This document shows positions 6,351 through 45,619 of a stretch of 64,000 bases of DNA, in pieces. The stretch covers positions 62,001-126,000 of the forward strand of contig MCFE01000020.1 of NCBI GenBank assembly GCA_002104905.1. The letters run 5' to 3'. A program made the position numbers and the translations under genes. The notes below the pieces were generated by a model. It saw nothing but the letters and a program-made list of their open reading frames with translations. It ran no database searches and had not been told where the DNA came from. Source of the stretch: Basidiobolus meristosporus CBS 931.73. Taxonomy: Eukaryota > Fungi > Basidiobolomycota. Each line of letters starts with the position of its first letter. Position 1 is the stretch's first letter.

Positions 6351-8846
6351 TCTATTTAATTTATGAGAACGTTTAAATCAGAACGCAAACCAATCTATAG
6401 ACCAGAGAGGACTCACTACAAGTAAATATGAGGCACCAAGGAGAAATAAATATTTGTAAATTTCAGAGTCGTTCACCAACAAATCACCCTGTTTGACCAA
6501 GGGCTTTATGAGTAAACTTCTCCATATACATGCAACTACCATGTATTGATAATATTATAGCAAACCAATTACATGTCAGTATTCCATCCAAACCCGGTAT
6601 TAAGCTCAGAATATTATCTGGGAGGCTGAGTAACTATCCAGTGTAGGATTGATTTGCTAGTCACATTTAATAGATACCAAGAGAAGTAAATTCCACTTGG
6701 TGATGAAATTCAAGCTACACGAAAGCATTTTCTAAAAAGTGGCATGTCCAATAGTGCCATTAAAGCCTCTTCTCGTCTTTCAAAGCAAGACTTAAGACAC
6801 TGGTCAGCATGTTTTCAGGAATCCTTGACCATAGGAAATCTGATCGGCTTGCTTCTGCAACTTCGCTGAACCCCCAAACCTAGACAATAGGTAGGCCATC
6901 AGGAGTCCCACCAGCTAATATACGTAGTGTAAATCCTAAAACTCGCTTTTCGCTTGTAACAATAGGCATATTGAAATCACCTTGCGGGACCTCTTCGCTG
7001 CACATTTAGCTTGCTTGGCTAGTATTTAAGATCAGAAACTCCCACCATCAATTTGACAATCTTGACAGAGCCACCATCTGCTGTTTCAGTTGAATTACTA
7101 AACTCCTCGCAATGTTTATTGTGCACTAAATGAGATCCAAGTCTGCAGTTCACTAAGCATCGCACCATCTTTCCTATCAAGCACTAGATTTTGAATTTTG
7201 AAGGCATATTCATATTCTCTATAAACCGAAATTTGACAAACAGTTGCATGTATCCTCATTCACATGAACCATTGATTAATTTTTTGAATGTATTGTGTTG
7301 AGCAAGTTCCCAGAATAGCTAATATTTGAACTCTAGAGCCGGACAGGCCTCATATGAATCGGAGGAACTTAGAATATACTAAAAATAGATTGCGAAAGAG
7401 TGCAAAACTAACCGCATTCCTTACCATTTCTCTAGTTGATATTAGCCCCATCATCTGTATCAGCTTGTGCCTTCTTCAATTTTAAAAATTGGCAACAAGT
7501 CATTTCAAGGTTGTAGCTGTAAATGAAACAGCATTATTACTGATTCAAGGAATAATGATATCTTAAACTACCATTGGATTTTACTAAGTTCTTTTTCACA
7601 TTCAGTCAAGACCTTTTGACATTGATTCAGTTTCACCCACAACTCCTCATCAGACACCTGATCAAAGCCTTCCATTCTAATACCATGTTAGACCATCAAG
7701 TCACAAGGAGCCATTTCGAACCTACTTTGATCTAGTCTGGCTGTAGTCTAATAGAATGATTTCATGAATCAAAGGGGTGGCATGAAAATGGTGACAAAGT
7801 CTCTCATACCATGATTATCAACGTGAGGCACCAGCTCCGCGAGATTCGAAGGTTCCCAAGTCAGAAATTTGGTAACCAATGCTTCCGCTAGATCACAAAT
7901 GTTTTGACACTACTGTACAATTGTATTCTGACGAAAAATTTACCTCGGCTTTCAAAATCCGTTAGCATCTTGTTGGCGTCAGAAGCATCTGGCGGATGAA
8001 TGGTTGCTAAATCTTTCAAGAAACGTTGCGTCTCAAAAAACAAATTGCCTAGGGATTGGCATGCATTGCTGATGCAGTGATTCAATATATATACAATTCA
8101 GAGGCTTAAAAGGCGAAGCATTACACCAATCTCGATTTGCTTTTCTCGATGACTATCAAGTCAGTATTCAGTTGATCAACCTCCCAAATTTTTTGCTGGT
8201 ATGCGTTCTCAAACCTATAATGATATTCCTTAGTTAGTGTGTAGAAGCAATCAAAAATGATGATTTTAACTCAGTCATCGTATTTGCTGTCTTAGCGGGA
8301 GAACCCAACACTTAAATAGCACCAAGGTAATGCATTGCAATGAATTGTATATGTATGCTAGTATTCTAATATCTGCATACTTTTGAGTCTAAAACCATGT
8401 AAATACCCCAAACGCCTGGGCTAAATAAACATCCAAAATCCAGTAGTGTATTTTGCAGCTGCGGATGTTTCAAACTGCACAATGCGGTTCTAGATGCTCT
8501 CAACCAGATGATCAGCAGAGCCAATGTAGCAATTTTTGCTAATTGGTTGTATAACAGATTCACAATAGAACGTATTGAAAATATACTAATGGCTTCTCAT
8601 CAGAAATATTAGGTGACACTTTTCATGATGTACAGTTGTATTTGTATATATGTATTCAGAGATTTTGTCATCTTGTATTAAGCTGGTATCACGCGACAGT
8701 TAGCGTCCCATATCTTCCTAACCGAGTATTAGGAGGAATGACCGAGGGTCTTAAATAAGTAAACAGATTTTAGCTAACCTGTCATATGTTTCAAATGTTG
8801 GAGAGGTGTCCGGCAAAACACCTCGACTCGCTCTGAACAGAACAAA

Positions 8847-9812
8847 TGGCAAATCTCCAGTCTACTCAACAACATACCTATAGACGAAAGATACAAAACA
8901 ACAGATAACATACAACAGGACATCCTGAATAATATAACCCTACATAATCAGTACGTCAAAACCTTCCTTCCAACACAAATATACCGACCAAATATTTGCA
9001 AACTTAAACGGATAAATCGCGGAGTAACTAGATACAATTGCTGGCCAGATACGCGCCCATCTAACATACAACATTGGATCAAACTCTCCAATCCCTTGCG
9101 ACATACACTACTGGCACCTGAACATAAAGAAACCATATGGTTCATGCTACATGTCAGGACTACTGTTAACACCCAGTTTAAATGGACAAATGGCCAATAT
9201 AATACAACATGCTCCCTGTGCAACCTTTTTCAGGAAACCAGAATGCATCTCCTCTGGGATTGTTGCCATGCCAGGAGATTCCTCCGATCCCTTATATATC
9301 TTTTTATGCAATTATTTGGACAAATACCTATCAACAGCGAACAACCGGGAATACACAATAACCTACAACTAGCCATGGATACAGTACAATCCGTTGAACA
9401 ATTCCCCAAATCGTTACATCCTTTGCGTGTCAAGATGACAATACCGTCGAAAATTCCCAATTTTTTGACGAAACAGAACACGAACACATATATTGCCTGA
9501 TTGTGGCCTTATATTTACTTACCATCTGGGAAACCAGATTGAAGATAATATACGACCATATCCCTTGGTCCAACAAGCTAATTCTGAACATCTTTCAAAG
9601 AAAATTTACCATCTACCTTAACTCGTATCAACATATGACACGATACAGGTACAAAAAACTTACCTTTACTGAGATATGGAATATCCAACCGAACATTATT
9701 ACAATTCAAAATGATCATACCCATGTAAACTGGGAAGAGACAATTTTACATCTTCTCTAACCTTCTTTGACTCATAAATCCTAACTACCCACAATAAAAT
9801 ATGGCCATCTAA
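8847..9812 (+). mobile_element. 5'-truncated non-LTR retrotransposon (LINE) remnant with zf-RVT domain
   Basis: CSLCNLFQETRMHLLWDC zinc knuckle typical of LINE ORF2 C-termini. Frameshift near 9498 (IA|LIVALYLLTIWETR). Flanked by a 17-bp direct repeat GCTCTGAACAGAACAAA at 8830-8846 and 9813-9829. AATAAA at 9793. Confidence 0.85.
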
Positions 9813-11248: not shown

Positions 11249-11348
11249 ACATACACTCAAAATAGAAGTCCATGATCAGGTGATTTCTAAATGATGTAGT
11301 ATTAAACCTACGAAGTGGACATCCTCACGATGCAAGGTTCTCTTTATC

Positions 11349-12755
11349 ATGTATACCTACACTAAGCTGAATCCGAAGTCGACAACTTTTGAGTTTATGG
11401 GCCCACCAGGCGCCATTCTGATCATTACACTTTGCAATGTATTGGTTTACTTTTTATACCTGGTTTGCAACGAAGATGGCTGCCCGCCCAATTGGTTATG
11501 GAACTTCAGCCCTCCGAATTTTTTGGCTTACGCTAACAAGCTGACCTTCTTTGAATACTCTACCCTATTTGTTTACCTCGGTTGGATCGCGTATCTTGCC
11601 ATTCTGTACTTTGTCATTCCTTGCGAAGAACGTGAGGGGACTCGGTTAAGAAATGGCCAAACTCTGAAGTACAAAATCAACGGTATTCCGTACGCTTTTC
11701 GGACCACTTTCCATATTCTTTCTAACACATGCCATTTTCACAGCTTTCAAGTCATTGTTGGTTACTCTCTTCTTGGTCATTCTTACGTTATTCGTCTACG
11801 GCCCCGCTCCTTTTGTATTTATTAGCGACCATTTTCTCTCGCTTATCACTGCAGCTGTGATAATCTCCACGACCCAGGCCTTCTATCTTTATTTTTCCTC
11901 TTTTGCTGATGGAAAGCTGTTGGCCCTTGGTGGTAATTCAGGCAACGTTATTTACGATGTAAGTAGCATTATTAGCGTTTATATATCCGAAACACCCCCT
12001 AATTCGGTGCTCAGTTTTTCATAGGGCGTGAGTTGAACCCTCGCATTGGCCCTCTAGATCTCAAGTATTTTTGTGAACTCCGACCCGGTCTTATTGGGTG
12101 GATAATGCTGAACTTTTCGATGACAGTCAAGCAATATGTTACATATGGGAAGGTCACAGATTCTATGCTTTTGGTGTTACTTCTCGAAGGCTATTATGTT
12201 ACTGAATCCCTTTACAATGAGGCGAAAGTGTTGACCACCATGGACATCACTACCGATGGCTTTGGATGGATGTTGAGCTTTGGAGATTTAACATTGGTTC
12301 CATTTACCTACACACTTCAGGCGCGGTATCTAGCTACCCATCCAATTGAGATCGGAGTGTTCTGGAGCTCCCTGATTGTCGGCACCAAGCTGTTAGGATA
12401 CTACATCTTCCGTAGTGCCAACAATGAGAAGAATGAGTTCCGTAAGAACCCAAACTCCCCCAAGGTGAAGCACTTGAAGTATATGGAAACAGAGACTGGT
12501 TCCAAATTAATTATTTCTGGCTGGTGGGGGATGTCCAGACACATCAATTATTTCGGTGATTGGCTCATGTCGCTTGCCTGGTGCTTACCCACTGGCTTCA
12601 ACACTATTTTCACCTACTACTATGCAATCTTCTTCGCGGTGTTGCTCTTCCATAGATCACTTAGAGATGAGCACAAGTGCAAGCTAAAGTACAAGAAGGA
12701 TTGGGACAGATACTGTGAGATTGTCCCTTACAAGATCATTCCTTACATCTATTAA
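11349..12755 (+). CDS. ERG24: Delta(14)-sterol reductase (ERG4/ERG24 family)
   Basis: Motifs GNSGNVIYD|FFIGRELNPR, DLKYFCELRPGL, TTMDITTDGFGWML, WWGMSRHINYFGD, CKLKYKKDW. Introns 11683-11743 and 11959-12014. Confidence 0.92.
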
Positions 12756-12848: not shown

Positions 12849-14363
12849 TTACTGGTTCATAAATAAGTCCCTCATCTTGCCGCATGTCTCATTGGTACAG
12901 CCTGGGCAGCGAAGTGGAAATTGTGGCGAATGCAGTGTTTCCTTCTCCAAGTTCTCCTTCACCGCCTCAGCCATGGCCTCCACGAAAAATGAAGAGTCGT
13001 TAAGAGATTCGGCTCTTTTGATACCGGTAATACCCAGCTATTTTTGAAAGAAGCGATGCTGGTTAATAGCGTGGATAAGGAATGCTCGATGCAATATTCT
13101 TCTACTAACCTGCTTTGCCTCATTACAGTATTCATGATCTAATTCATATAATGTCTCGATGTGATCAGAGGTAAATGCGATAGGTACAAGCAGTACGTTC
13201 TTCTGCTTTTGCTTAGCAAGCCCTTTTAAAGCATCGTTTGTTTGCGGGCCTAACCAAGCAGAGGGCCCAACCTGAGATTGCCAAACTAACCGGTATGGAT
13301 TGCTATAGCCCAGGCTGGCCATAACCCTGTCTACAGTGGCTCCTACCTCGGCGGGATACGGGTCTCCTCGATTAACGGTGGCCATGGGCAGAGAATGGGC
13401 AGAAAATAAGATCACCACTTTATCACGCTCTTCCTCGGAATATTCATTTAGCGCCGCTTGAACCCGGTCAGTAAATGCCTTCATATACTGTTAGATTTGT
13501 GTTTCATTAGGACACCAAACAGTAACACGTACTTTGATTAATTTAGGATGAGTAGACCATCTGTCTATCAGGCTCCACTTGATGGTACCATCTGCATCTA
13601 GCGTCTGAAGTCTTCTGTATAGTTCGTTCAAATTACTACCAGTAGTAGTACACGAATACTGTGGATACTGTGTGAACGCAACCACTCTACGCACACCATC
13701 TTTTTTTATCTCTTCCAAGGCATGCTCGGTTAACGGGGCAGCATATCGAAATCCAATGTAAGATTTATGTGGGGCTTGTCAAAGTACGGGTTATTACGGA
13801 TTCTTTAAATCAAAATTCACCTCCATTCCAGTTACCTGTGTTGGGGGAAATTTTATCCAACAGTTGTTCCATAAGCCTGCCCTGCTTTTGCGTCCAGCTA
13901 CGAATTGGAGAGCCACCGCCGATGGCGCCGTATTGGCCAACGATCTTGGGGGTTCGTCGTTTTGCGATGAGTGGAGCAAGCACCGATTGGAAAGGAAGTG
14001 GAATAATATCGGAGTCCGAAAAGAGCCTAGTCAAGAAGTCCTCTACTTCGGATAATTTGGAAGGTCCACCCATGTTCATTAGTAGCACACCAGTTGCGCT
14101 ATTATGGTGAAAAAGGGTTAAGGGGATGGGCAAGTTACCACAGCTGGGTGTGACTTACGGCTTGAAGTTGTTGGTCGTAGAAGGATCCAAACTCCTTTCA
14201 CTTGGGCCATCCGTGGCTATGGAGCGAGAGAGTATAGCTTTAGCGCTGAAAGCTATGGCGAACGATTAGATAATGCTGGTAACTGAGCAGTGAAGAGATC
14301 TTTACCATTAAAGCCAGCCCTGTTTCCCAAGCTTCCACGTAGACAATTCATCAGCAGTGACAT
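12849..14363 (-). CDS. HEM15: Ferrochelatase with mitochondrial presequence
   Basis: [64 protein letters not shown] and C-terminal RCPGC..ETC. The spliced N-terminus starts [11 protein letters not shown] at 14363. Confidence 0.95.
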
Positions 14364-17286: not shown

Positions 17287-17643
17287 TCAAAAATCGAACA
17301 CCTTGTCTGTTTTACTAACAAGGACGCACCGATTGCTGTATGTCTGTTCGAACTTGAGGCTGGCGCCTTTTACAGTGGCTGTTATCGGGTCAAATATAGT
17401 CAAACACAATTTACCATTGTCTGAGAGCTCTTCAAAGGACCCAGATGCCTTGTCAAGAGATGAACAAGCAGCGTTAGCGTGAGGATGAGTGCCCCCAACA
17501 GGATGGCAGCTTAAGGTTACTTCGGACAATTTTGGACCCCCAGTATCCAGTCCTTGGTGAATAGTGAGCGTGTAGTGTGCTTCCCTTGCTGATATTATCA
17601 AGGAACTGCTTAGAAGAGCGCAAAATACAGCATACAGCCTCAT
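17287..17643 (-). CDS. Secreted Streptomyces subtilisin inhibitor (SSI, family I16)-like protein
   Basis: Signal peptide MRLYAVFCALLSSSLIISA, then VTLSCHPVGGTHPHANAAC, CLTIFDPITATVKG, FEQTYSNRC and terminal VFDF. Four Cys in SSI spacing; intronless. Confidence 0.9.
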   Translation of the reverse strand: MRLYAVFCALLSSSLIISAREAHYTLTIHQGLDTGGPKLSEVTLSCHPVGGTHPHANAACSSLDKASGSFEELSDNGKLCLTIFDPITATVKGASLKFEQTYSNRCVLVSKTDKVFDF

Positions 17644-18014
17644 GGATACAGCCAGCACACAAACCGCGCTATTTTATAGTTTATATTTGTAGATCTTATT
17701 AGGTATTGGTGATTAGGATGTAATTCGAAAGAATTCTTTAGAAACAATTGCGATTCAACTCTGCTTAACTCATTAGGTTATAAAATCAGGTAAAATGCTG
17801 AGTATGATTAATTGTGAAGATAGGTTTGCTACTGGAGATATCACCCTCACGGATTGCCAGACCGTAGCGTGCCTTACTGGCTACTACCTTGGTGGATAAC
17901 TAACGTCATGTTTGAAGATGTATTTGGCATACTAACAGAATATATGTTACAAGTTTATGCTGCATTGTGGCTGTTATAAGTTTTATGTTTGCACCTAAAT
18001 ATCTCAGCTGACTT

Positions 18015-20671: not shown

Positions 20672-21589
20672 TCAGTCAATCACCTGTAAACGCCTAGCGA
20701 TAATAATCGAATTTACCACCTCGTTGTAAGGGTGAACAACCAGGACTGGTTCAAAACCAGTCAGCATTTCTGTCTCAATCTCGGGGTACAGAAGCGTTCT
20801 GAGACTATGGGCGCTACGAAGAATTAAATACGAGCCGGTCTTCATGGCTTTCCATAATTGCTTTGTTATTTTCTGTTTCTCTGCTGGTTCAAGTCCCACA
20901 AGTGCTGCTAGATACACCACATCGTGTTTCTTGAGATCCTGGATGTCCTCAACACCTTGATGATGGAATTGCATATTGTCTTGGACATCTGCCAGTTGGT
21001 TCACTAAGGCCATACTAAGCTCCAGTGCTTCTGCGTCGATATCGTAGTTGTCAATGGCAAAGTTGGCCGGATTCGAGTTGCCCTCTTGGGAGAGTAGCTC
21101 TCGTGCCAAACAAATCGAAGTTAAAGGAAGTGGCCCTGAACCTAGAAACGCAATCCTTTCAGGCGATTTCATCAAAACCGACCGGATAGCATTGAGCTCC
21201 ATCTTAACTAAAGCAACATAGTTCTGATAATATGGAAAACGTAATAGCTCCATTGTTGTATCCTTTGGACTGGCAACAATTTGCGAGGCCCATTTCACTT
21301 CCAAGCGGAATTCCCCAAGCGCACAAAGTTGGCGAAAGTGCTGGGTGATCTCGGTTATTCTCCTGTCGTGCAGAACAATCTCTAGTTCATGACGAGGCAG
21401 TGTTTTTATGCAAATGCTGACTAATTCACTAAAGGCGTCATTGATTTCAGGGCAAGGATCCAATACGGCTGCCTTAGTAAGAACTTGGTATATGGAGCAT
21501 ATGCGATCCCTAATATTTGTCGTCTCGAGGCATCCATTTTGCTGAAGAAAATCAGTTGATTCGGATGGGATGCTGGTGCGGCTAAGCAT
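20672..21589 (-). CDS. NAS: Nicotianamine synthase
   Basis: Intronless 305 aa. NAS N-terminal helix (ICSIYQ..LDPCPEINDAFSELVSIC), LCALGEFRLE, FPYYQNY..L..ME, IAFLGSGPLPLTS, SAM-binding NYDID, VVYLAALVG and LRSAHSLRTLLYP. Confidence 0.95.
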   Translation of the reverse strand: MLSRTSIPSESTDFLQQNGCLETTNIRDRICSIYQVLTKAAVLDPCPEINDAFSELVSICIKTLPRHELEIVLHDRRITEITQHFRQLCALGEFRLEVKWASQIVASPKDTTMELLRFPYYQNYVALVKMELNAIRSVLMKSPERIAFLGSGPLPLTSICLARELLSQEGNSNPANFAIDNYDIDAEALELSMALVNQLADVQDNMQFHHQGVEDIQDLKKHDVVYLAALVGLEPAEKQKITKQLWKAMKTGSYLILRSAHSLRTLLYPEIETEMLTGFEPVLVVHPYNEVVNSIIIARRLQVID

Positions 21590-22140
21590 CTCTGGCTTCA
21601 GTTAAGTAGATTGAGAAGGATGAGGATCTATTTGAGCAGGGCAAAGTATTTTATACTGTAGATGCTAAGGCCGAGCACTGACGACGCATTTATTCGTACT
21701 TAACCCGAATATAATGCGACTAATAGACTCGAGATAGAAAGTGGCCCAGTTCAAATCTGAAAGAACCTCCATGCGACATGTTCTGTTTACTCTAAGCCAA
21801 CCACAGCTTTAAATTCCACAATTGTGCGTTAGAGATCATCTATATCCTAACTACATAAGGCTGGTATCATTCAAATCGCTTAATGGGAATCGAAGCAAAC
21901 TGGGCGAATATTCCTAAACTTTGTCAAACAGCACCACACCGTCCAATAAGGTATCCAGATAACCTCGGGCACTTCAATCTTTATGCTGTACAGCGCTTAC
22001 ATCAAATGGCGGAGGGTATTGCAACACAGCCTCAGAGGGATGTATCATGTTGATGGCCGCAGCGTTTACAGTCAAGCAAAAGTAATCCGTATTTAAACTG
22101 CAACTTCGGGGCATATCTCAAGATTTAAGCCACTATCATT

Positions 22141-23836
22141 ATGTCACCCAACAGGGAAGAGGGACTCGAAATCACGCCGCTGCCAACGAAACAGCTTGTT
22201 ATCCTATGTTTGGTCAGGCTTGCTGAGCCAATAAATTACACCATTCTCTTTCCGTTCATGTATAGGGTATGTTGCAGTTGCGAAAAGTACTGATACATTT
22301 TCTAATTCAATGGAGGGGCTAGATGGTAAGATGGCTGAAAGTTGGAGAGAGTGAAGAGGATGTTGGTTCTTATGCAGGACTGGTTGCTGCTTCTTTCGCC
22401 ATTGCCCAGTTTTTCAGCGGTACAGCGGGGGCATCTCTATTGTAATACTCAGCTTTGCTGACCATTTTCGAGATGTATAGGTGTTCCCTGGGGCTGGTTA
22501 TCTGACCGTATTGGCCGAAAGCCAGTGATTTTAATGGGTTTGCTTGGGAGTACTATCGGCATCATAATGTTTGGACTGAGTCAAAGCTATGCTATGGCTA
22601 TCATCAGCCGCTCAATAGCCGGTATACTCAATGGGAACATTGGAGTCATCAAATCGTTGCTGGCGGAGATCACTGATAAAACGAATCGAGCGAAGGCATT
22701 TTCACTGCTTCCGCTTGTTTGGGGTATTGGTAGTGTTGTTGGGCCACTGCTAGGTGGCTTATTGTCAGAGCCGGCTACTCAGTATCCTTCTGTATTTGGG
22801 AACAATGCTATGATGCTGAAATTCCCTTATCTTTTACCATGTTTAGTCGGATCTTGTATCAGCTTGGCTGGATCAATATTCGGATTCTTTTTCCTCGAAG
22901 AAACTTTGGAAAGAAAAGTACTGGAGAAGAAACAAAAGCAAGTAGATCTGGAGTTGAAGACTTCTCCACAGGTTGCTGAGGAGCATAACAAAAGGGTGGA
23001 GGCAAAGGAAGAGTGGTCGACAGTTGGTGCTGAAGATGAAAAGAAAGCACTTCCCCATGGGTCAGGGCCGTCACTGCGCACTGCACTTACCACACCAGTC
23101 CAAGTAGTAGTCCTATCCTATGTATTGTTCTCTCTACAAAATGTGACATGGGATGAGCTGTACAATCTTTGGACGGCTGCACCCATCGAGCATTACGGTC
23201 TTGGTCTAAACCAAGCCAAGATCAGTATTACCTTGGCGATTGTAGGGATCTTGACGCCAGTAGTTCAACTTTTGATTTATCCGCCACTTCAAAGACGCTT
23301 TGGAGATCTCACTTGTTACCGAGTGGTGTTGTTTGTTTATATTCCATTTTACGTATTTCAACCGTTTGTTGCAGATCTTGCCAAGTACGGGGAGCAGGTC
23401 AAGGAGAGTAATGGAAGCGGCTATGACTTGGTACGAGTGGGAGTTTGGGCAGGGGTGGGGCTATGTCTTGTAACGAAAGTGATTTGCTCACCCATCTGTT
23501 TCACTGCTACATCGATACTGCTTACAGATGTGTGCAAAGATAAGGGAGCTTTGGGGACAGTGAACGGGTAAGCTTATTGCTCTGGGGGTTCCATATATTC
23601 AGGTATTTGAATCCCATGTTCTTCACTGTAGATATTCTCAAGCAGTAGTCTCTCTTACCCGAGCAGTAGGGCCAGCAATGGGCGGTGCTCTACTTACGCT
23701 ATCGATCAAATCCACGCTACCATATCCTTTGAACAATCATTTGGTTTGGAATACCTTGGCACTGATCGCCCTCGTCACCTGGGTAGAATCGTTTTGGGTT
23801 AAGGCCGTTTTGAGGAAAAAGCGCAATCTCAAGTGA
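22141..23836 (+). CDS. MFS efflux transporter, ZIF/TOM-like (DHA1-related)
   Basis: Spliced N-terminus TPLPTKQLVILCLVRLAEPINYTILFPFMYR|MVRWL..EEDVGSYAG; motif A WGWLSDRIGRKPV; GILNGNIGVIKSLLAEITDKTNRAKAFS; GPLLGGLLSEPA..YP; GALGTVNG|YSQ..SLTRAVGP. Introns 22267-22322, 22420-22481 and 23568-23631. Confidence 0.9.
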
Positions 23837-24214
23837 TTCCCAAATAAAAAACTAGATGCATGGTGATGTGAGACAATGAGAAGCTATCAAGCAGTCAACA
23901 AATAGATAAAATTACATGGATAGTTTAAGCGAATCCACGAGTCCCGAAGAGTTCTCTTCAGGGCGGTACAATTGAATTGATACAATCGTGCATGAATCAT
24001 GCCAATAGCGGCACGGGTCAGAAGACTGATTGGGTTTAATATTAGAATAAACCTGCTCCTGGTGTGTACCTGTGTAAGGTGATCTTAACCACCAGGTATC
24101 CTTATATTGGTGAGGAAAGCAAGATCCACGTCTCCAAATGTACGAAGATGGATTCTTATAAAAGGTGATGATATGCCGTCCCATCCCCCACTCCAATACT
24201 CCTGATAATCTGGT

Positions 24215-26354
24215 ATGACTGACGACAAGGATAGCTACAGTATTTCCGATTCAAAAGGCGCTATTACCCAAGCTCTTTCTGCGCAGGGTCAGGATGCATC
24301 AGCTGTGGAGGAACGCCAGTTCACCCTCCGAGCGCTGGTTGTAGGTACCATATTGGGAGGGTTTGTTTCTGCTAGTAACTTGTATATTGGCCTTAAGGTC
24401 GGTTGGGTATTTGGTGCATCCATGTTCGGCGCTCTTTTTGGTTTTGCTATTTTGAAGCCATTCTCTCGTATGACTGGGAGCTATTTTGGCCCTAAAGAAA
24501 ACTGCGTCGTCCAGACTGCCGCCACTACCACCGGCGGGCTATATGTTGGGTTCTTTACCGCAATACCAGCCCTCTATCACTTGAAACTTATGTCAGCAAA
24601 CTTTATGGATGATATACCAGCCTTAATTCTCTGGACGGCAGGTAAGACCATTTCATGATGAAGTTGCCTTCCTCCTCGGTCGCCTAAGTGCCTCCCTTGT
24701 AGCCGCGGCATTCTTCGGGCAATTTTTTGCGGTGCCGCTGCGAAGGTACTTTGTCATAAAGCAAAAACTGCCCTTCCCCTCTCCAACCGCAACAGCCGAA
24801 GCCATCAGGCAACTGCATGCATCCATGACGGGCGAGCTCGAAGCCATGCGCAAAGCCAAGCTGATGTTTGGGTGTTTTATCGTCTCCGCCGTTGTGCCCA
24901 TTATCGGTGTATTCATTCCACTTTTAGAATCCGTTCACCTGTTGTATTGGATTGGGGTAGCTACTGGAAGTCAAGGGCTCATAGGTGCCGACCGTGTCTG
25001 GAAATGGGTGATTAATCTGGATCCAGCGTTCCTAGGTAAATTCATGGCCTTTCATATAACCAAAGCTCCTGGCGGCTAAAGTTTCGATTTGATCGAAGGG
25101 GCTGGAACACTCATTCCAAGCAGTACGGTGCTATCCTTATTTTTAGGGCAATTGATATCTTACGGAATAGCTGGTCCGCTTATGCTGACATCTGGTAGTA
25201 TCATCAGTGCAAGCGGATTCTCACCAAATGGACCATCTGCTCAATCATGGTTCCTCTGGCCTGGCATAGTTCTAATGTTGGTTTCCTCTTTTACCGAGCT
25301 GCTGTGTAATGGAGGAAGCATAGTGAGAGCGGTCCGTGGAGGATTCACAGGACTACGCAATGTTACGAGGCGCACCATAAGGCGCTGGAGGCGGAGCTCA
25401 GCAGTACACAATATCTCCCATGACGATGACGACAGAGACGACGATGATGACCCAGCGCCTAGGAATGAGAGGATCCCGGCATGGATGTGGATAGTCGGTC
25501 TGGTGATTGCAGCTATGCTTAATTGCCTGGTGTTAGGATTCTACTTCCACATGCCAGCACATCAGTCAATTTTGGCCATCGTTATTGCCTTTGTGCTATC
25601 CTTTGTTGGACTTCAATCGGTAGGGGAGACGGATATTAACCCGGCCGGCTCGATTGGAAAGACATCGCAGCTTGTGTTCAGTCAATTTTCTGCCCCAACG
25701 CTTGCCGATGCTCAACGACTCAGCCTTATGGCAGGAAACGTTGCAGGTTCGGCATCGTACCAGGCAGTGGATATGGTCAAAGATCTACTCACGGGTCACC
25801 TTCTTGGCGGAAGCCCGTTGGCTCAGTTTTACACGCAATTTGTTGGCTCGTTCTTCGCCATCTTCATAGGGGTGGGCATTTTCATTCTATATGCCTCTGC
25901 TTATCCATGTGTCACAGATGCCAGCAAAATGCCATGTGAATTCCAACTGGTCGGTGTGGTTGCTTGGAAGAATGTGGCAGTCACTATGACTACCGGCCTG
26001 GATATTCCATACGAAAGTAAAATGTTCTCGGTGGCATGTGGCATCTTCGCGGCCGTCTATACTCTATTCAAGAAGTTTGTCGTCCCAGAGAGATACCATG
26101 GGTACATGCTAAATATCAATGCACTAGGGATTGGTTTTGTTAATGCAGACCCTGGCTCGGCCTTTGGGATGCTTTGCGGCAACCTGATATTCATGCTCTG
26201 GAGTTTCATCCAGCCCAAGCGTGCGGAGTTCTACCATTACTCCGTCGGTGGGGGCCTGCTCTCGGGAGCTGGTATAGCTGGACTTATCAAAGCATTGCTC
26301 AATATATTCGGGGCCAATAAATCCTTTATAAGCTGGGGAACTCCCTCATCATAA
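24215..26354 (+). CDS. OPT-superfamily transporter, YSL (yellow stripe-like) clade
   Basis: QFTLRALVVG..LYIGLKVGW, KENCVVQTAA, VPLRRYF..LPFPSPTATA, AFL|GAGTL, GETDINP..GK..Q and DLLTGHLLG..P..Q. Lacks the NPG/KIPPR motifs of the peptide-transporting clade. Introns 24642-24702 and 25036-25098. Confidence 0.9.
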
Positions 26355-44627: not shown

Positions 44628-45619
44628 TCAATTACTCGCATGTGAAAGTATCTCCGCCACCAAGCCCATTGGAACAGTGGCGAGATTTGGCTGGGATGGA
44701 AAGACATTGCCGTGTGGCATTGACACCATCACAGGAGCTTCGCTTGTGTGCATCCCAACACCGTCGGCCTCAAGCGGGAACTGGATGAACTGGCCAGATT
44801 CCCGGACGTACCGGTGCCTAACGTTGCAAACACAGCCCCGGTGCCCAAGTGCCTGACCTTTCAGTTGCAGTAGCTCCTCTTTAAGCTGGCCCACCAATTG
44901 TCGAAGCTCTCTATTTCTGTTGGCAACCATCTGCGATCTTTGCTCCAGCTCCTTGACCCATATCTTCTTTTTCTGTCGACATTTGGATGCTGCAACTCGG
45001 TTGCGCTCGAGGAAACGCCGTCGCTTCTCATCATTTCCCTGGAAGCTTGATTCCTTTCTTTTGTGACTGTCTAATCTCGATTGCCTGTTGTCATCAGAGT
45101 TGCTGCTCTGACCTCGTTTGATGCCCATCTTAAGCGCTTTGCAGGCTGGCTCCAGCCAGTTTGGGTACATCAATTGCTGTAGCGGGTGGGAGAATGGCCG
45201 ACTACCTGTAGACGATTTCCTGATATCCACCGACTGCGATGCTATCGAGAACTGGGAGGCTCTCGAGAGTATTTCGTGGTAGGACAGTGGAAGAGTGGTG
45301 GTGTCAACAGGCGCGATATCAACTACAGCATCTTTACTGCTTGGATTGGCCGTGGATGTGCTGATTGTCCTCTTGCCGCCCAGTGGGGGGAAACTAGCAT
45401 CGAATGGGTTAACTCCGCCCAATGCTGATAAACTAGGAGCTGGCCTATACACAACACAGTCAAGAAGAAGCCGGGCAGGCTTCGGGTCAACCTCAACCTG
45501 AGTCCCTTGACACTCTCAAGATCAACACCTGAATGCTGAGCAATCTGAGGCGAAAGGCGAAGCTTACCTTCAGTGAAACCAGAACGTGAAAAATCAAACT
45601 CAGGCTCGGCTCCGTTCAT
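44628..45619 (-). CDS. ATF1/ATF2-like bZIP transcription factor
   Basis: Basic region EKRRRFLERNRVAASKCRQKKK with a leucine zipper. The proposed 5' exons MNGAEPEFDF.. are less certain. Confidence 0.88.

What the first reader, a model, noticed from the sequence alone, without database searches (positions are those of the whole stretch)
20672..26354. Candidate fungal nicotianamine metallophore gene cluster: synthase, TOM/ZIF-like exporter and YSL importer
Seen: three consecutive genes. NAS (-) is divergent from an MFS (+) across a 551-bp shared promoter, and a YSL-clade OPT (+) follows 378 bp later; no other recognisable intact gene lies within several kb on either side. Established: NAS builds nicotianamine from three SAM molecules; in plants, ZIF/ZIFL/TOM-family MFS proteins export nicotianamine or phytosiderophores, and YS1/YSL transporters import the metal chelates, but those genes are dispersed. 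Bacterial opine metallophores (staphylopine Cnt system) cluster synthase, MFS exporter and importer. Fungal NAS is known, e.g. from Neurospora. Inference: this is a clustered eukaryotic make/export/re-import module for Zn, Fe or Ni scavenging, paralleling plant Strategy II. I am not aware of such a fungal cluster being described, but I cannot verify that here.
Basis: partly seen in the sequence, partly recalled or inferred. Interest (0 to 1): 0.92.

Follow-up and report, generated by a model that had tools for sequence, protein, structure and literature searches.

The report
Fungal nicotianamine synthase–transporter gene cluster
In the gut fungus Basidiobolus meristosporus, a gene predicted to make the metal-binding molecule nicotianamine sits beside an exporter-type and an importer-type transporter gene. 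The trio is kept together in other copies and species, which suggests an undescribed fungal metal-handling system, but nothing about its function has been tested.

Summary
NAS (20672-21589, -), a 4-exon MFS gene (22141-23836, +) and a 3-exon OPT gene (24215-26354, +) are intact. They are separated by 551 and 378 bp. The window is Basidiobolus meristosporus CBS 931.73.

- **Recurrence:** the same triad, in the same order and orientation, occurs as a paralogous copy in this genome and in B. ranarum. The outer neighbours differ in each case.
- **Chytrid parallels:** one chytrid has NAS next to a related OPT, and two chytrids pair NAS with a ThrE-type exporter.
- **Background:** Mucorales, a Sordariales fungus and 45 metagenomic NAS loci lack the arrangement.
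- **MFS:** it has the antiporter motifs of efflux pumps. Its nearest reviewed relatives include Arabidopsis ZIFL2, ZIF1 and ZIFL1 (26-29% identity).
- **OPT:** it is on the YS1/YSL side of the family, not the peptide side. It belongs to a pan-fungal clade typified by yeast YGL114W. It keeps barley YS1's three proton-coupling aspartates but not its substrate-binding Lys482 or Tyr451.
- **Regulation:** Zap1-type zinc-response motifs are strongly enriched next to NAS in the paralogue and in chytrids, but absent from the window's copy.
- **Limits:** no RNA data could be found, so function, metal and membrane are inferred.
- **Prior reports:** I found no published description. The scan had already noted the paralogous copy elsewhere in this genome.

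The parts
20672..21589 (-). Nicotianamine synthase gene (single exon, 305 aa, core NAS domain without the plant C-terminal extension)
   Evidence: Pfam NAS E 2.2e-72. GSGPLP SAM-binding motif at residue 150. 73% identical to the paralogue P0002 and to B. ranarum P0003. In the tree it is monophyletic with the other Basidiobolus NAS and sister to Spizellomycetales chytrid NAS (94/86). Nearest solved structure is archaeal thermoNA synthase, E 2.5e-11.
21590..22140 (.). 551-bp intergenic region shared by the divergent NAS and MFS genes (presumed bidirectional promoter)
   Evidence: Coordinates follow from the gene models. It aligns poorly with the equivalent regions of L001, L002 and L003. No ACC-N5-GGT, CARGGT or ATCWGATAA site is present.
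22141..23836 (+). MFS transporter gene of the DHA1/TetA-like, ZIF-like subfamily. Exons 22141-22266, 22323-22419, 22481-23567, 23632-23836; 504 aa
   Evidence: Model built and identical to deposited protein P0241. Pfam MFS_1. Motif A GWLSDRIGRK at residue 79 and antiporter motif C GSVVGPLLGG at residue 158. AF2 model pLDDT 89.5. Nearest Swiss-Prot models: A. fumigatus mfsB 30%, AtZIFL2 29%, psiT2 27%, AtZIF1 26%, AtZIFL1 28%, YCR023C 22%, then a drop to MdtG at 16-18%. The NAS-linked Basidiobolus MFS genes form one clade with support 100.
23837..24214 (.). 378-bp intergenic region between the MFS stop codon and the OPT start codon
   Evidence: Coordinates follow from the gene models. No ZRE-like site; four CCAAT boxes.
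24215..26354 (+). OPT-family transporter gene, YSL-like (non-peptide) branch. Exons 24215-24641, 24703-25035, 25099-26354; 671 aa
   Evidence: Model built and identical to deposited protein P0121. Pfam OPT on all three exons. AF2 model pLDDT 83.7. Barley YS1 is the only solved structure with this fold (TM 0.61/0.67, E 4e-19). Swiss-Prot fold ranking: YGL114W, then 27 plant YS1/YSL proteins, with the first peptide-clade OPT at rank 30. Proton-coupling Asp triad conserved as D432, D478, D482.

Best explanation
The three genes form one nicotianamine (NA) handling module. Inferred steps: NAS condenses three S-adenosylmethionine units into NA in the cytosol. The ZIF-like MFS moves free NA out of the cytosol, probably as a proton antiporter. 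The YSL-like OPT brings metal-NA complexes back in, probably as a proton symporter. I think the most likely setting is the plasma membrane, which would make this a small-molecule metallophore system for scavenging zinc or another divalent metal. It would be analogous to grass Strategy II and to bacterial staphylopine-type (Cnt) systems. Shown here: the gene identities, the intact reading frames, the transporter subfamilies and their direction-related motifs, and conservation of the trio as a unit. Inferred: the product, the substrates, the membrane, the metal and co-regulation.
For: (1) Families: NAS scores 244 bits. The MFS sits in the ZIF1/ZIFL subfamily and carries antiporter motif C. The OPT is nearest to YS1/YSL and far from peptide OPTs, has the YS1 fold, and keeps the proton-coupling aspartates. 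(2) The trio is conserved as a unit. Order and orientation are the same at the window, L001 and L002, but outer neighbours differ: SSI and WD40 in the window, a cation-ATPase fragment and kinesin at L001, 6PF2K at L002. Coding regions are 73-84% identical while the intergenic DNA barely aligns. (3) A third Basidiobolus lineage keeps NAS head-to-head with the same MFS clade (L003). (4) Partial recurrence outside the genus: in the chytrid Gaertneriomyces, NAS is followed 750 bp later by an OPT of the same branch and preceded divergently by a ThrE-family exporter. Spizellomyces keeps the ThrE-NAS pair. These chytrid NAS are the sister group of the Basidiobolus NAS. (5) The background rate is low: none of 45 metagenome NAS loci of 5 kb or more has such a neighbour. 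Cokeromyces, Benjaminiella and Bombardia have no transporter within 10 kb. (6) Zap1-type ZRE-like ACC-N5-GGT sites: 17 occur in 10.1 kb of NAS-flanking intergenic DNA against 1.6 expected (P about 2e-12). They include ACCCTAGAGGT and ACCCTGGAGGT in L001, which resemble functional yeast ZREs listed in PMC2535606. This fits the reported induction of Neurospora NAS by zinc deprivation (Trampczynska 2006, as cited in the preprint read). (7) All members of this OPT clade that the search found in Basidiobolus lie at NAS clusters: three next to NAS and one at a contig start, 99.5% identical to L001's OPT. They share a long stem branch.
Against: There is no expression, metabolite or transport evidence of any kind: no RNA run could be listed and the runs laid were DNA. 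The window's own copy has no ZRE-like site in either intergenic region. The OPT clade is pan-fungal and includes yeast YGL114W, from a species which, to my knowledge, has no NAS, so the clade cannot be NA-specific as a whole. By sequence alignment, barley YS1's substrate contacts Lys482 and Tyr451 are Gly in this protein; only the aromatic caps are kept, as Phe535 and Trp543. The closest characterised plant relative of the MFS, AtZIF1, works at the vacuole rather than the cell surface (Haydon 2012, listed). Most NAS-bearing fungi sampled show no clustering.
Confidence: 0.45

Rival explanations
1. Intracellular NA buffering or storage. The MFS loads NA into the vacuole, as Arabidopsis ZIF1 does. 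The OPT releases metal-NA from the vacuole or another compartment, as proposed for AtYSL4/6. The module would then tune cytosolic zinc, nickel or iron availability or tolerance rather than scavenge metal from outside.
For: The gene-family evidence is the same as for the main reading. AtZIF1 and AtZIFL proteins are among the nearest characterised relatives of the MFS, and vacuolar NA is the established role of ZIF1 (Haydon 2012, listed). AtYSL6 is the third-ranked fold match of the OPT. The literature read here treats fungal NA as an intracellular chelator.
Against: Nothing in the sequences tells which membrane is used, so this rival is not excluded. Zinc-starvation-type ZRE motifs at the paralogue and in chytrids fit acquisition or remobilisation better than detoxification. 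The chytrid partner is a ThrE-type amino-acid exporter, a family I know from bacterial cell-membrane export.
Confidence: 0.25
2. Linkage without a shared pathway. The MFS is a general drug or metabolite efflux pump, and the OPT imports peptides, glutathione or another substrate. The trio persists only because the copies arose by recent segmental duplication.
For: The nearest Swiss-Prot relative of the MFS is named a multidrug transporter (A. fumigatus mfsB), and psiT2 and azaK are secondary-metabolite cluster pumps. The OPT clade occurs in fungi without NAS (YGL114W). YS1 substrate contacts are not conserved. The order of duplication relative to speciation is unresolved. The window copy has no metal-response motif.
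Against: The outer flanks differ among the three triads while the trio stays intact. Intergenic DNA has diverged beyond alignment, so the copies are not recent. NAS-OPT adjacency arose or persisted in a chytrid too. A different exporter family sits head-to-head with NAS in two chytrids. No such neighbours appear at 45 other NAS loci.
Confidence: 0.2
3. Uptake of foreign NA. The OPT mainly imports metal-NA or related chelates made by other organisms, for example plant matter in the gut and dung habitat. NAS and the MFS would serve a separate internal role.
For: Basidiobolus is described as an amphibian gut symbiont (from my own knowledge of Tabima et al. 2020, not read here), and NA is abundant in plant food (abstract of PMC12552558). 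The OPT belongs to the chelate-transporting branch.
Against: This does not explain why the OPT stays within 400-700 bp of the MFS-NAS pair in three loci, nor the adjacency in a free-living chytrid.
Confidence: 0.1

Closest known systems
Grass Strategy II iron acquisition (NAS, then mugineic acids; TOM1 efflux; YS1/YSL15 uptake)
   Same: The same three protein families and the same logic: a SAM-derived aminocarboxylate chelator, a ZIF-like MFS for efflux, and a YS-type OPT proton symporter for re-uptake (PMC9691689 read).
   Different: There are no NAAT or DMAS genes in the cluster, so the product would be NA itself. The OPT is only 19-22% identical to YSLs and lies in a fungal clade. YS1's Lys482 and Tyr451 are not conserved. 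The metal is unknown; zinc is suggested for the paralogue.
Bacterial opine metallophore operons (staphylopine Cnt, pseudopaline)
   Same: Clustered synthase, exporter and importer for a NA-like metallophore used in zinc and other metal scavenging (PMC7438024 and PMC9175090, seen). The NAS gives a weak hit to the CntL model (E 2e-6).
   Different: There is no opine dehydrogenase (CntM) or histidine racemase gene in the cluster. The CntL score is far below its cut-off (27 against 350 bits). The importer is an OPT rather than an ABC system. The genes are eukaryotic, with introns and separate promoters.
Neurospora crassa NAS (Trampczynska et al. 2006)
   Same: A fungal enzyme of the same family, shown to make NA and induced by zinc deprivation (as cited in the preprint read). 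Sordariales NAS genes fall within the same fungal radiation in my tree.
   Different: NA is treated there as an intracellular chelator, and no linked transporters are described. The one Sordariales locus I examined (Bombardia) has no transporter within 10 kb.
Arabidopsis ZIF1/ZIFL1/ZIFL2 and the fungal homologues mfsB, psiT2, YCR023C
   Same: The same MFS subfamily at 22-30% identity, with a clear drop to the next family (MdtG, 16-18%). One fungal member in the hit list is auto-named after ZIFL2 (P0295).
   Different: The NAS-linked Basidiobolus MFS genes form their own long-stemmed clade. Their substrate and membrane are unknown.
Yeast YGL114W and the pan-fungal YSL-like OPT clade
   Same: The nearest reviewed relative (23% identity, TM 0.73). 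The 150 nearest cluster representatives sampled are fungal, from chytrids to Dikarya, and some are auto-named 'YSL7'.
   Different: YGL114W has no known substrate. The papers found mention it only in screens, judging from their titles and abstracts. The Basidiobolus proteins differ from the otherwise 90%-or-more conserved family residue at 26 positions.

Membership tests
Nicotianamine synthase (Pfam PF03059) | Full-length match to the NAS model above the curated cut-off | tested here: met
   244.2 bits against a cut-off of 27.1, covering 9-273 of 276 model positions.
Nicotianamine synthase (Pfam PF03059) | SAM-binding glycine-rich motif and family-invariant residues | tested here: met
   GSGPLP at residues 150-155, invariant across 26 fungal, moss and metagenomic NAS sequences.
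Nicotianamine synthase (Pfam PF03059) | Groups with eukaryotic NAS rather than bacterial or archaeal NAS-like enzymes that make shorter products | tested here: met
   Nested among fungal NAS and sister to chytrid NAS (94/86). The CntL equivalog scores only 27 bits against a 350-bit cut-off.
Nicotianamine synthase (Pfam PF03059) | Makes nicotianamine from three SAM molecules | not testable with these tools
   Needs an enzyme assay or LC-MS.
YS1/YSL transporters (OPT family, metal-chelate branch) | OPT fold with YS core and scaffold domains; closer to YS1/YSL than to peptide-type (PT) OPTs | tested here: met
   Barley YS1 is the only solved structure matched (TM 0.61/0.67). 27 YS1/YSL proteins rank 2-28 and the first PT-type hit is at rank 30 with 14% identity.
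YS1/YSL transporters (OPT family, metal-chelate branch) | Membership of the plant YSL clade itself | tested here: inconclusive
   The best reviewed match is yeast YGL114W (23%), with YSLs at 19-22%. The 150 nearest representatives score E 1e-43 or better, and every named one in a sample of ten is fungal. A joint tree with plant YSLs could not be built because no plant sequences were obtainable.
YS1/YSL transporters (OPT family, metal-chelate branch) | Proton-coupling aspartates of HvYS1 (Asp446, Asp490, Asp494) | tested here: met
   They align to D432, D478 and D482, which are invariant or nearly so in the fungal clade.
YS1/YSL transporters (OPT family, metal-chelate branch) | HvYS1 substrate-contact residues (Gly76, Phe130, Tyr451, Lys482, Tyr547, Tyr551) | tested here: not met
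   In the phmmer alignment Gly76 is kept as G63, Tyr451 aligns to G437, Lys482 to G470, Tyr547 to F535 and Tyr551 to W543. The TM2 region around Phe130 aligns ambiguously. The paper notes that NA-specific YSLs also vary at Phe130 or Tyr551.
ZIF/ZIFL/TOM subfamily of MFS (DHA1, TetA-like) | 12-TM MFS with motif A and the antiporter motif C | tested here: met
   GWLSDRIGRK at residue 79 and GSVVGPLLGG at residue 158, conserved in all four Basidiobolus copies. The motif definitions are from my own knowledge. Top NCBIfam hits are the Tet efflux models, and the top PDB hit is MFSD10.
ZIF/ZIFL/TOM subfamily of MFS (DHA1, TetA-like) | Nearest characterised relatives are ZIF1/ZIFL proteins | tested here: met
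   AtZIFL2 29%, AtZIF1 26% and AtZIFL1 28% fall within the top six, together with fungal mfsB and psiT2. The next family scores 16-18%.
ZIF/ZIFL/TOM subfamily of MFS (DHA1, TetA-like) | Orthology to TOM1 or ENA1, and NA or phytosiderophore efflux | not tested
   TOM1 and ENA1 did not appear among the Swiss-Prot matches and no sequences were obtainable. Transport needs an assay.
Cnt-type opine metallophore system | CntL-type enzyme together with an opine dehydrogenase (CntM) in the cluster | tested here: not met
   The CntL model scores 27 bits against a cut-off of 350. No further recognisable gene lies within 2-3 kb of the trio.
Fungal functional gene cluster | The same genes are kept adjacent across paralogues and species while the flanks change | tested here: met
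   The window, L001 and L002 share the trio but not the outer genes.
Fungal functional gene cluster | Co-regulation of the members | not testable with these tools
   No RNA run was listed and the runs laid were DNA. Motif evidence exists only for the paralogue.

The most novel reading that the evidence does not exclude
Basidiobolus, and in a variant form the Spizellomycetales chytrids, secrete nicotianamine as a true small-molecule metallophore and take the metal complex back up through a YSL-like OPT. This would be the first Strategy-II-like system outside plants in a eukaryote. It would also give a first substrate to the orphan pan-fungal YGL114W-type OPT clade and to fungal ZIF-like MFS pumps. 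The two Basidiobolus copies may have split their regulation between metals, with zinc for copy B and an unknown signal for the window's copy A.
Probability: 0.3. Interest if true: 0.85.

Novelty: new variant of a known kind. Interest (0 to 1): 0.6.

Why it matters
Known fungal zinc scavengers are proteins (Pra1/Aspf2), and known fungal small-molecule metallophores are iron siderophores. A clustered NA synthase, exporter and importer would point to a third route.

It would turn several open questions into direct experiments:
- What the orphan fungal YSL-like OPTs and ZIF-like MFS pumps carry.
- Whether fungal NA ever leaves the cell.
- What YS-type transporters did before plants acquired NAS from fungi, a question raised in the 2026 preprint read.

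The cluster also gives a compact three-gene set that could be moved into yeast to test each step.

Tried and rejected
- **RNA evidence:** no RNA run was listed for the 5.7-kb stretch. The six runs found with the NAS gene were DNA, and the two that held it gave unspliced contigs identical to the window. Splicing and co-expression therefore could not be checked.
- **Promoter conservation:** the four NAS-MFS intergenic regions align poorly. They share no 7- to 9-mer beyond chance.
- **Other regulatory motifs:** the A. fumigatus ZafA core CARGGT and the SreA-type ATCWGATAA are not enriched. CCAAT counts are unremarkable.
- **Bacterial block transfer:** rejected. The nearest relatives of all three proteins are fungal.
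- **L009 as a third triad:** rejected as independent evidence. Its OPT is 99.5% identical to L001's and lies at a contig start, so it is probably an allelic or redundant contig.
- **L008 (third MFS lineage in this genome):** no NAS or OPT within 10 kb by tblastn.
- **Metagenome scan for more clusters:** 80 NAS loci were fetched and none has an OPT or ZIF-like MFS neighbour.
- **Clade-specific residues:** the NAS-linked OPTs differ from the family consensus at 26 conserved positions, several in the segments that form the YS1 pocket. The Gaertneriomyces OPT also lacks the family's Lys484 and Arg494. I treat this as a lead only. Three closely related sequences and a divergent chytrid protein cannot carry a statistical claim, and I had no model coordinates to measure distances.
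- **Joint trees with plant proteins:** no tree with plant YSL, TOM1 or ZIF1 sequences could be built, because no tool supplied those sequences.


Full report
**What is there.**
The window carries a single-exon NAS gene at 20672-21589 on the minus strand (305 aa; Pfam NAS E 2.2e-72).
- It lies head-to-head, 551 bp away, with a four-exon MFS gene at 22141-23836 (504 aa).
- A three-exon OPT gene follows 378 bp later at 24215-26354 (671 aa).
- My spliced models use canonical GT-AG introns. They are identical, residue for residue, to proteins deposited for Basidiobolus meristosporus CBS 931.73 (P0241, P0121). That both identifies the genome and confirms the models.
- The nearest recognisable neighbours are a subtilisin-inhibitor-like ORF 3.0 kb to the left and a WD40 gene 2.0 kb to the right.
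- Further out lie ferrochelatase, ERG4/24, an alpha/beta hydrolase and RNA polymerase II Rpb1.

**Is the linkage more than chance?**
I fetched the DNA around NAS homologues elsewhere.
- The same trio, in the same order and orientation, occurs on another contig of the same genome (L001, MCFE01000045) and in B. ranarum (L002). The genes outside the trio differ in all three places.
- Proteins of the three triads are 73-84% identical. The intergenic DNA barely aligns and shares no 7- to 9-mer beyond chance, so these are not recent copies.
- A third Basidiobolus lineage keeps NAS head-to-head with an MFS of the same clade but has no OPT nearby (L003). Its B. meristosporus MFS counterpart stands alone (L008).
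- L009 holds an OPT 99.5% identical to L001's at a contig start, so it is probably a redundant contig.
- The order of the A/B duplication relative to the species split is unresolved.

**Outside the genus.**
- In the chytrid Gaertneriomyces, NAS is followed 750 bp later by an OPT of the same branch. It is preceded, divergently, by a ThrE-family putative exporter.
- Spizellomyces keeps the ThrE-NAS pair. Powellomyces has neither called.
- In the NAS tree these chytrid enzymes are the sister group of the Basidiobolus enzymes (94/86).
- In the mucoralean Helicostylum, an OPT lies 7.7 kb from NAS with two genes between.
- Cokeromyces, Benjaminiella and the Sordariales fungus Bombardia have no transporter within 10 kb.
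- A metagenome scan returned 80 further NAS loci, 45 of them 5 kb or longer. None has an OPT or a ZIF-like MFS neighbour.
- The arrangement is therefore lineage-restricted, not a general property of NAS genes. Within its lineage it is kept as a unit.

**What the transporters are.**
- *MFS.* It has MFS motif A and the antiporter motif C that marks proton-coupled efflux pumps (motif definitions from my own knowledge).
  - Its structure model (pLDDT 89.5) matches best A. fumigatus mfsB (30% identity), Arabidopsis ZIFL2 (29%), psiT2 (27%), ZIF1 (26%), ZIFL1 (28%) and yeast YCR023C (22%). There is then a clear drop to bacterial MdtG at 16-18%.
  - It therefore belongs to the subfamily that contains the plant NA and phytosiderophore pumps. 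That subfamily also contains fungal pumps named for other substrates.
- *OPT.* Its model (pLDDT 83.7) has the fold of barley YS1, the only solved structure it matches.
  - Among reviewed proteins it ranks yeast YGL114W first (23%), then 27 plant YS1/YSL proteins (19-22%). The first peptide-type OPT appears only at rank 30, at 14%.
  - An exhaustive sequence search shows that its close family is pan-fungal, from chytrids to Dikarya.
  - 'YSL clade' is thus right as a contrast with peptide transporters, but the protein is not a member of the plant YSL clade proper.
  - Mapping the barley YS1 residues described in PMC9691689 onto the alignment gives a mixed result. The three proton-coupling aspartates are conserved, Gly76 is kept, and the two tyrosine caps are replaced by Phe and Trp. 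Lys482 and Tyr451 both align to Gly.
  - Proton symport is therefore plausible. The substrate pocket differs from that of a phytosiderophore transporter.

**Regulation.**
- No RNA data could be used.
- In the promoters I noticed palindromes of the form ACC-N5-GGT, the frame of the yeast Zap1 zinc-responsive element ACCTTNAAGGT (PMC2535606).
- Across all loci held, these sites are strongly concentrated in the intergenic DNA flanking NAS: 17 in 10.1 kb against 1.6 expected.
- The counts are four in L001, three in L002, five in Gaertneriomyces, three in Powellomyces and two in Spizellomyces. In L001 and L002, two of the sites (those that match the stricter ACCYYNRRGGT pattern or miss it by one base) lie at matching spacing, 145 and 147 bp.
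- This fits the reported zinc-deprivation induction of Neurospora NAS (cited).
- The window's own copy has none, in either intergenic region. The same is true of L003, the Mucorales and Bombardia.
- For this window the controlling signal is therefore unknown. The two Basidiobolus copies may have diverged in regulation.

**Interpretation.**
- The most economical reading is a three-part NA module: synthesis by NAS, efflux of NA from the cytosol by the MFS, and return of metal-NA by the OPT. I put 0.45 on the extracellular, scavenging version.
- I put 0.25 on an intracellular version modelled on Arabidopsis ZIF1 and YSL4/6. The sequences do not say which membrane is used.
- I put 0.2 on linkage without a shared pathway. 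Its main support is that the OPT and MFS families have members with other or unknown substrates, and that the window copy lacks any metal motif.
- I put 0.1 on uptake of foreign NA.

**Novelty.**
- Searches for nicotianamine with fungal clusters, transporters, zinc regulation, Basidiobolus and YGL114W found no description of such a cluster.
- The two recent phylogenetic studies of NAS and YSL (PMC12454661 and the 2026 preprint) do not mention synteny. The Laffont and Arnoux 2020 review could not be read.
- The parts and the logic are known from plants and bacteria. The new element is finding them as a conserved cluster in a fungus, hence 'new variant of a known kind'.
- The scan had already noted the same kind of cluster, and a NAS-MFS pair, on other pieces of this genome. 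This window is therefore one of at least two paralogous copies, not a unique locus.

Noticed in passing
window 17290-17673 (-): ORF with a clear Pfam SSI (subtilisin inhibitor-like) domain, E 6.5e-18. I know this family mainly from actinobacteria, so it is a candidate bacterial gene transfer into Basidiobolus.
   Followed up: no
L004 7481-9333 (-) and L011 7288-9123 (-): In two Spizellomycetales chytrids, NAS is paired head-to-head with a ThrE-family putative amino-acid exporter. It is a different exporter family in the same position as the Basidiobolus MFS.
   Followed up: partly
L001 9531-9720; L002 5155-5312; L004 9717-9840 and 11582-11659; L010 9647-9941; L011 9393-9655: Clusters of Zap1 ZRE-like ACC-N5-GGT palindromes in NAS-flanking intergenic DNA: 17 sites against 1.6 expected. 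They are absent from the window's copy.
   Followed up: yes
L001 20022-20906 (-): A C2H2 zinc-finger gene with a weak Zap1_zf1 Pfam hit lies about 9 kb from the NAS of the paralogous cluster.
   Followed up: no
L007 196-10909: In Helicostylum pulchrum the order is OPT, saccharopine-dehydrogenase-like gene, protein kinase, NAS. The kinase-NAS pair is also present in Cokeromyces and Benjaminiella.
   Followed up: no
window 13041-14107 (-) and 11295-12752 (+): Ferrochelatase and ERG4/ERG24 sterol reductase genes lie 7-9 kb upstream of NAS. They are probably housekeeping neighbours.
   Followed up: no
window 8778-9497 (+): An ORF with a reverse-transcriptase zinc-binding domain (zf-RVT) lies in a low-GC stretch (37-39% GC at 6-10 kb). 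It is likely a retroelement remnant.
   Followed up: no
window 44631-45515 (-): A bZIP transcription factor ORF lies about 18 kb downstream of the cluster. There is no evidence of a link.
   Followed up: no
L063 3510-6757: A metagenomic contig with four NAS-like tblastn segments spanning 3.2 kb, suggesting tandem NAS genes.
   Followed up: no
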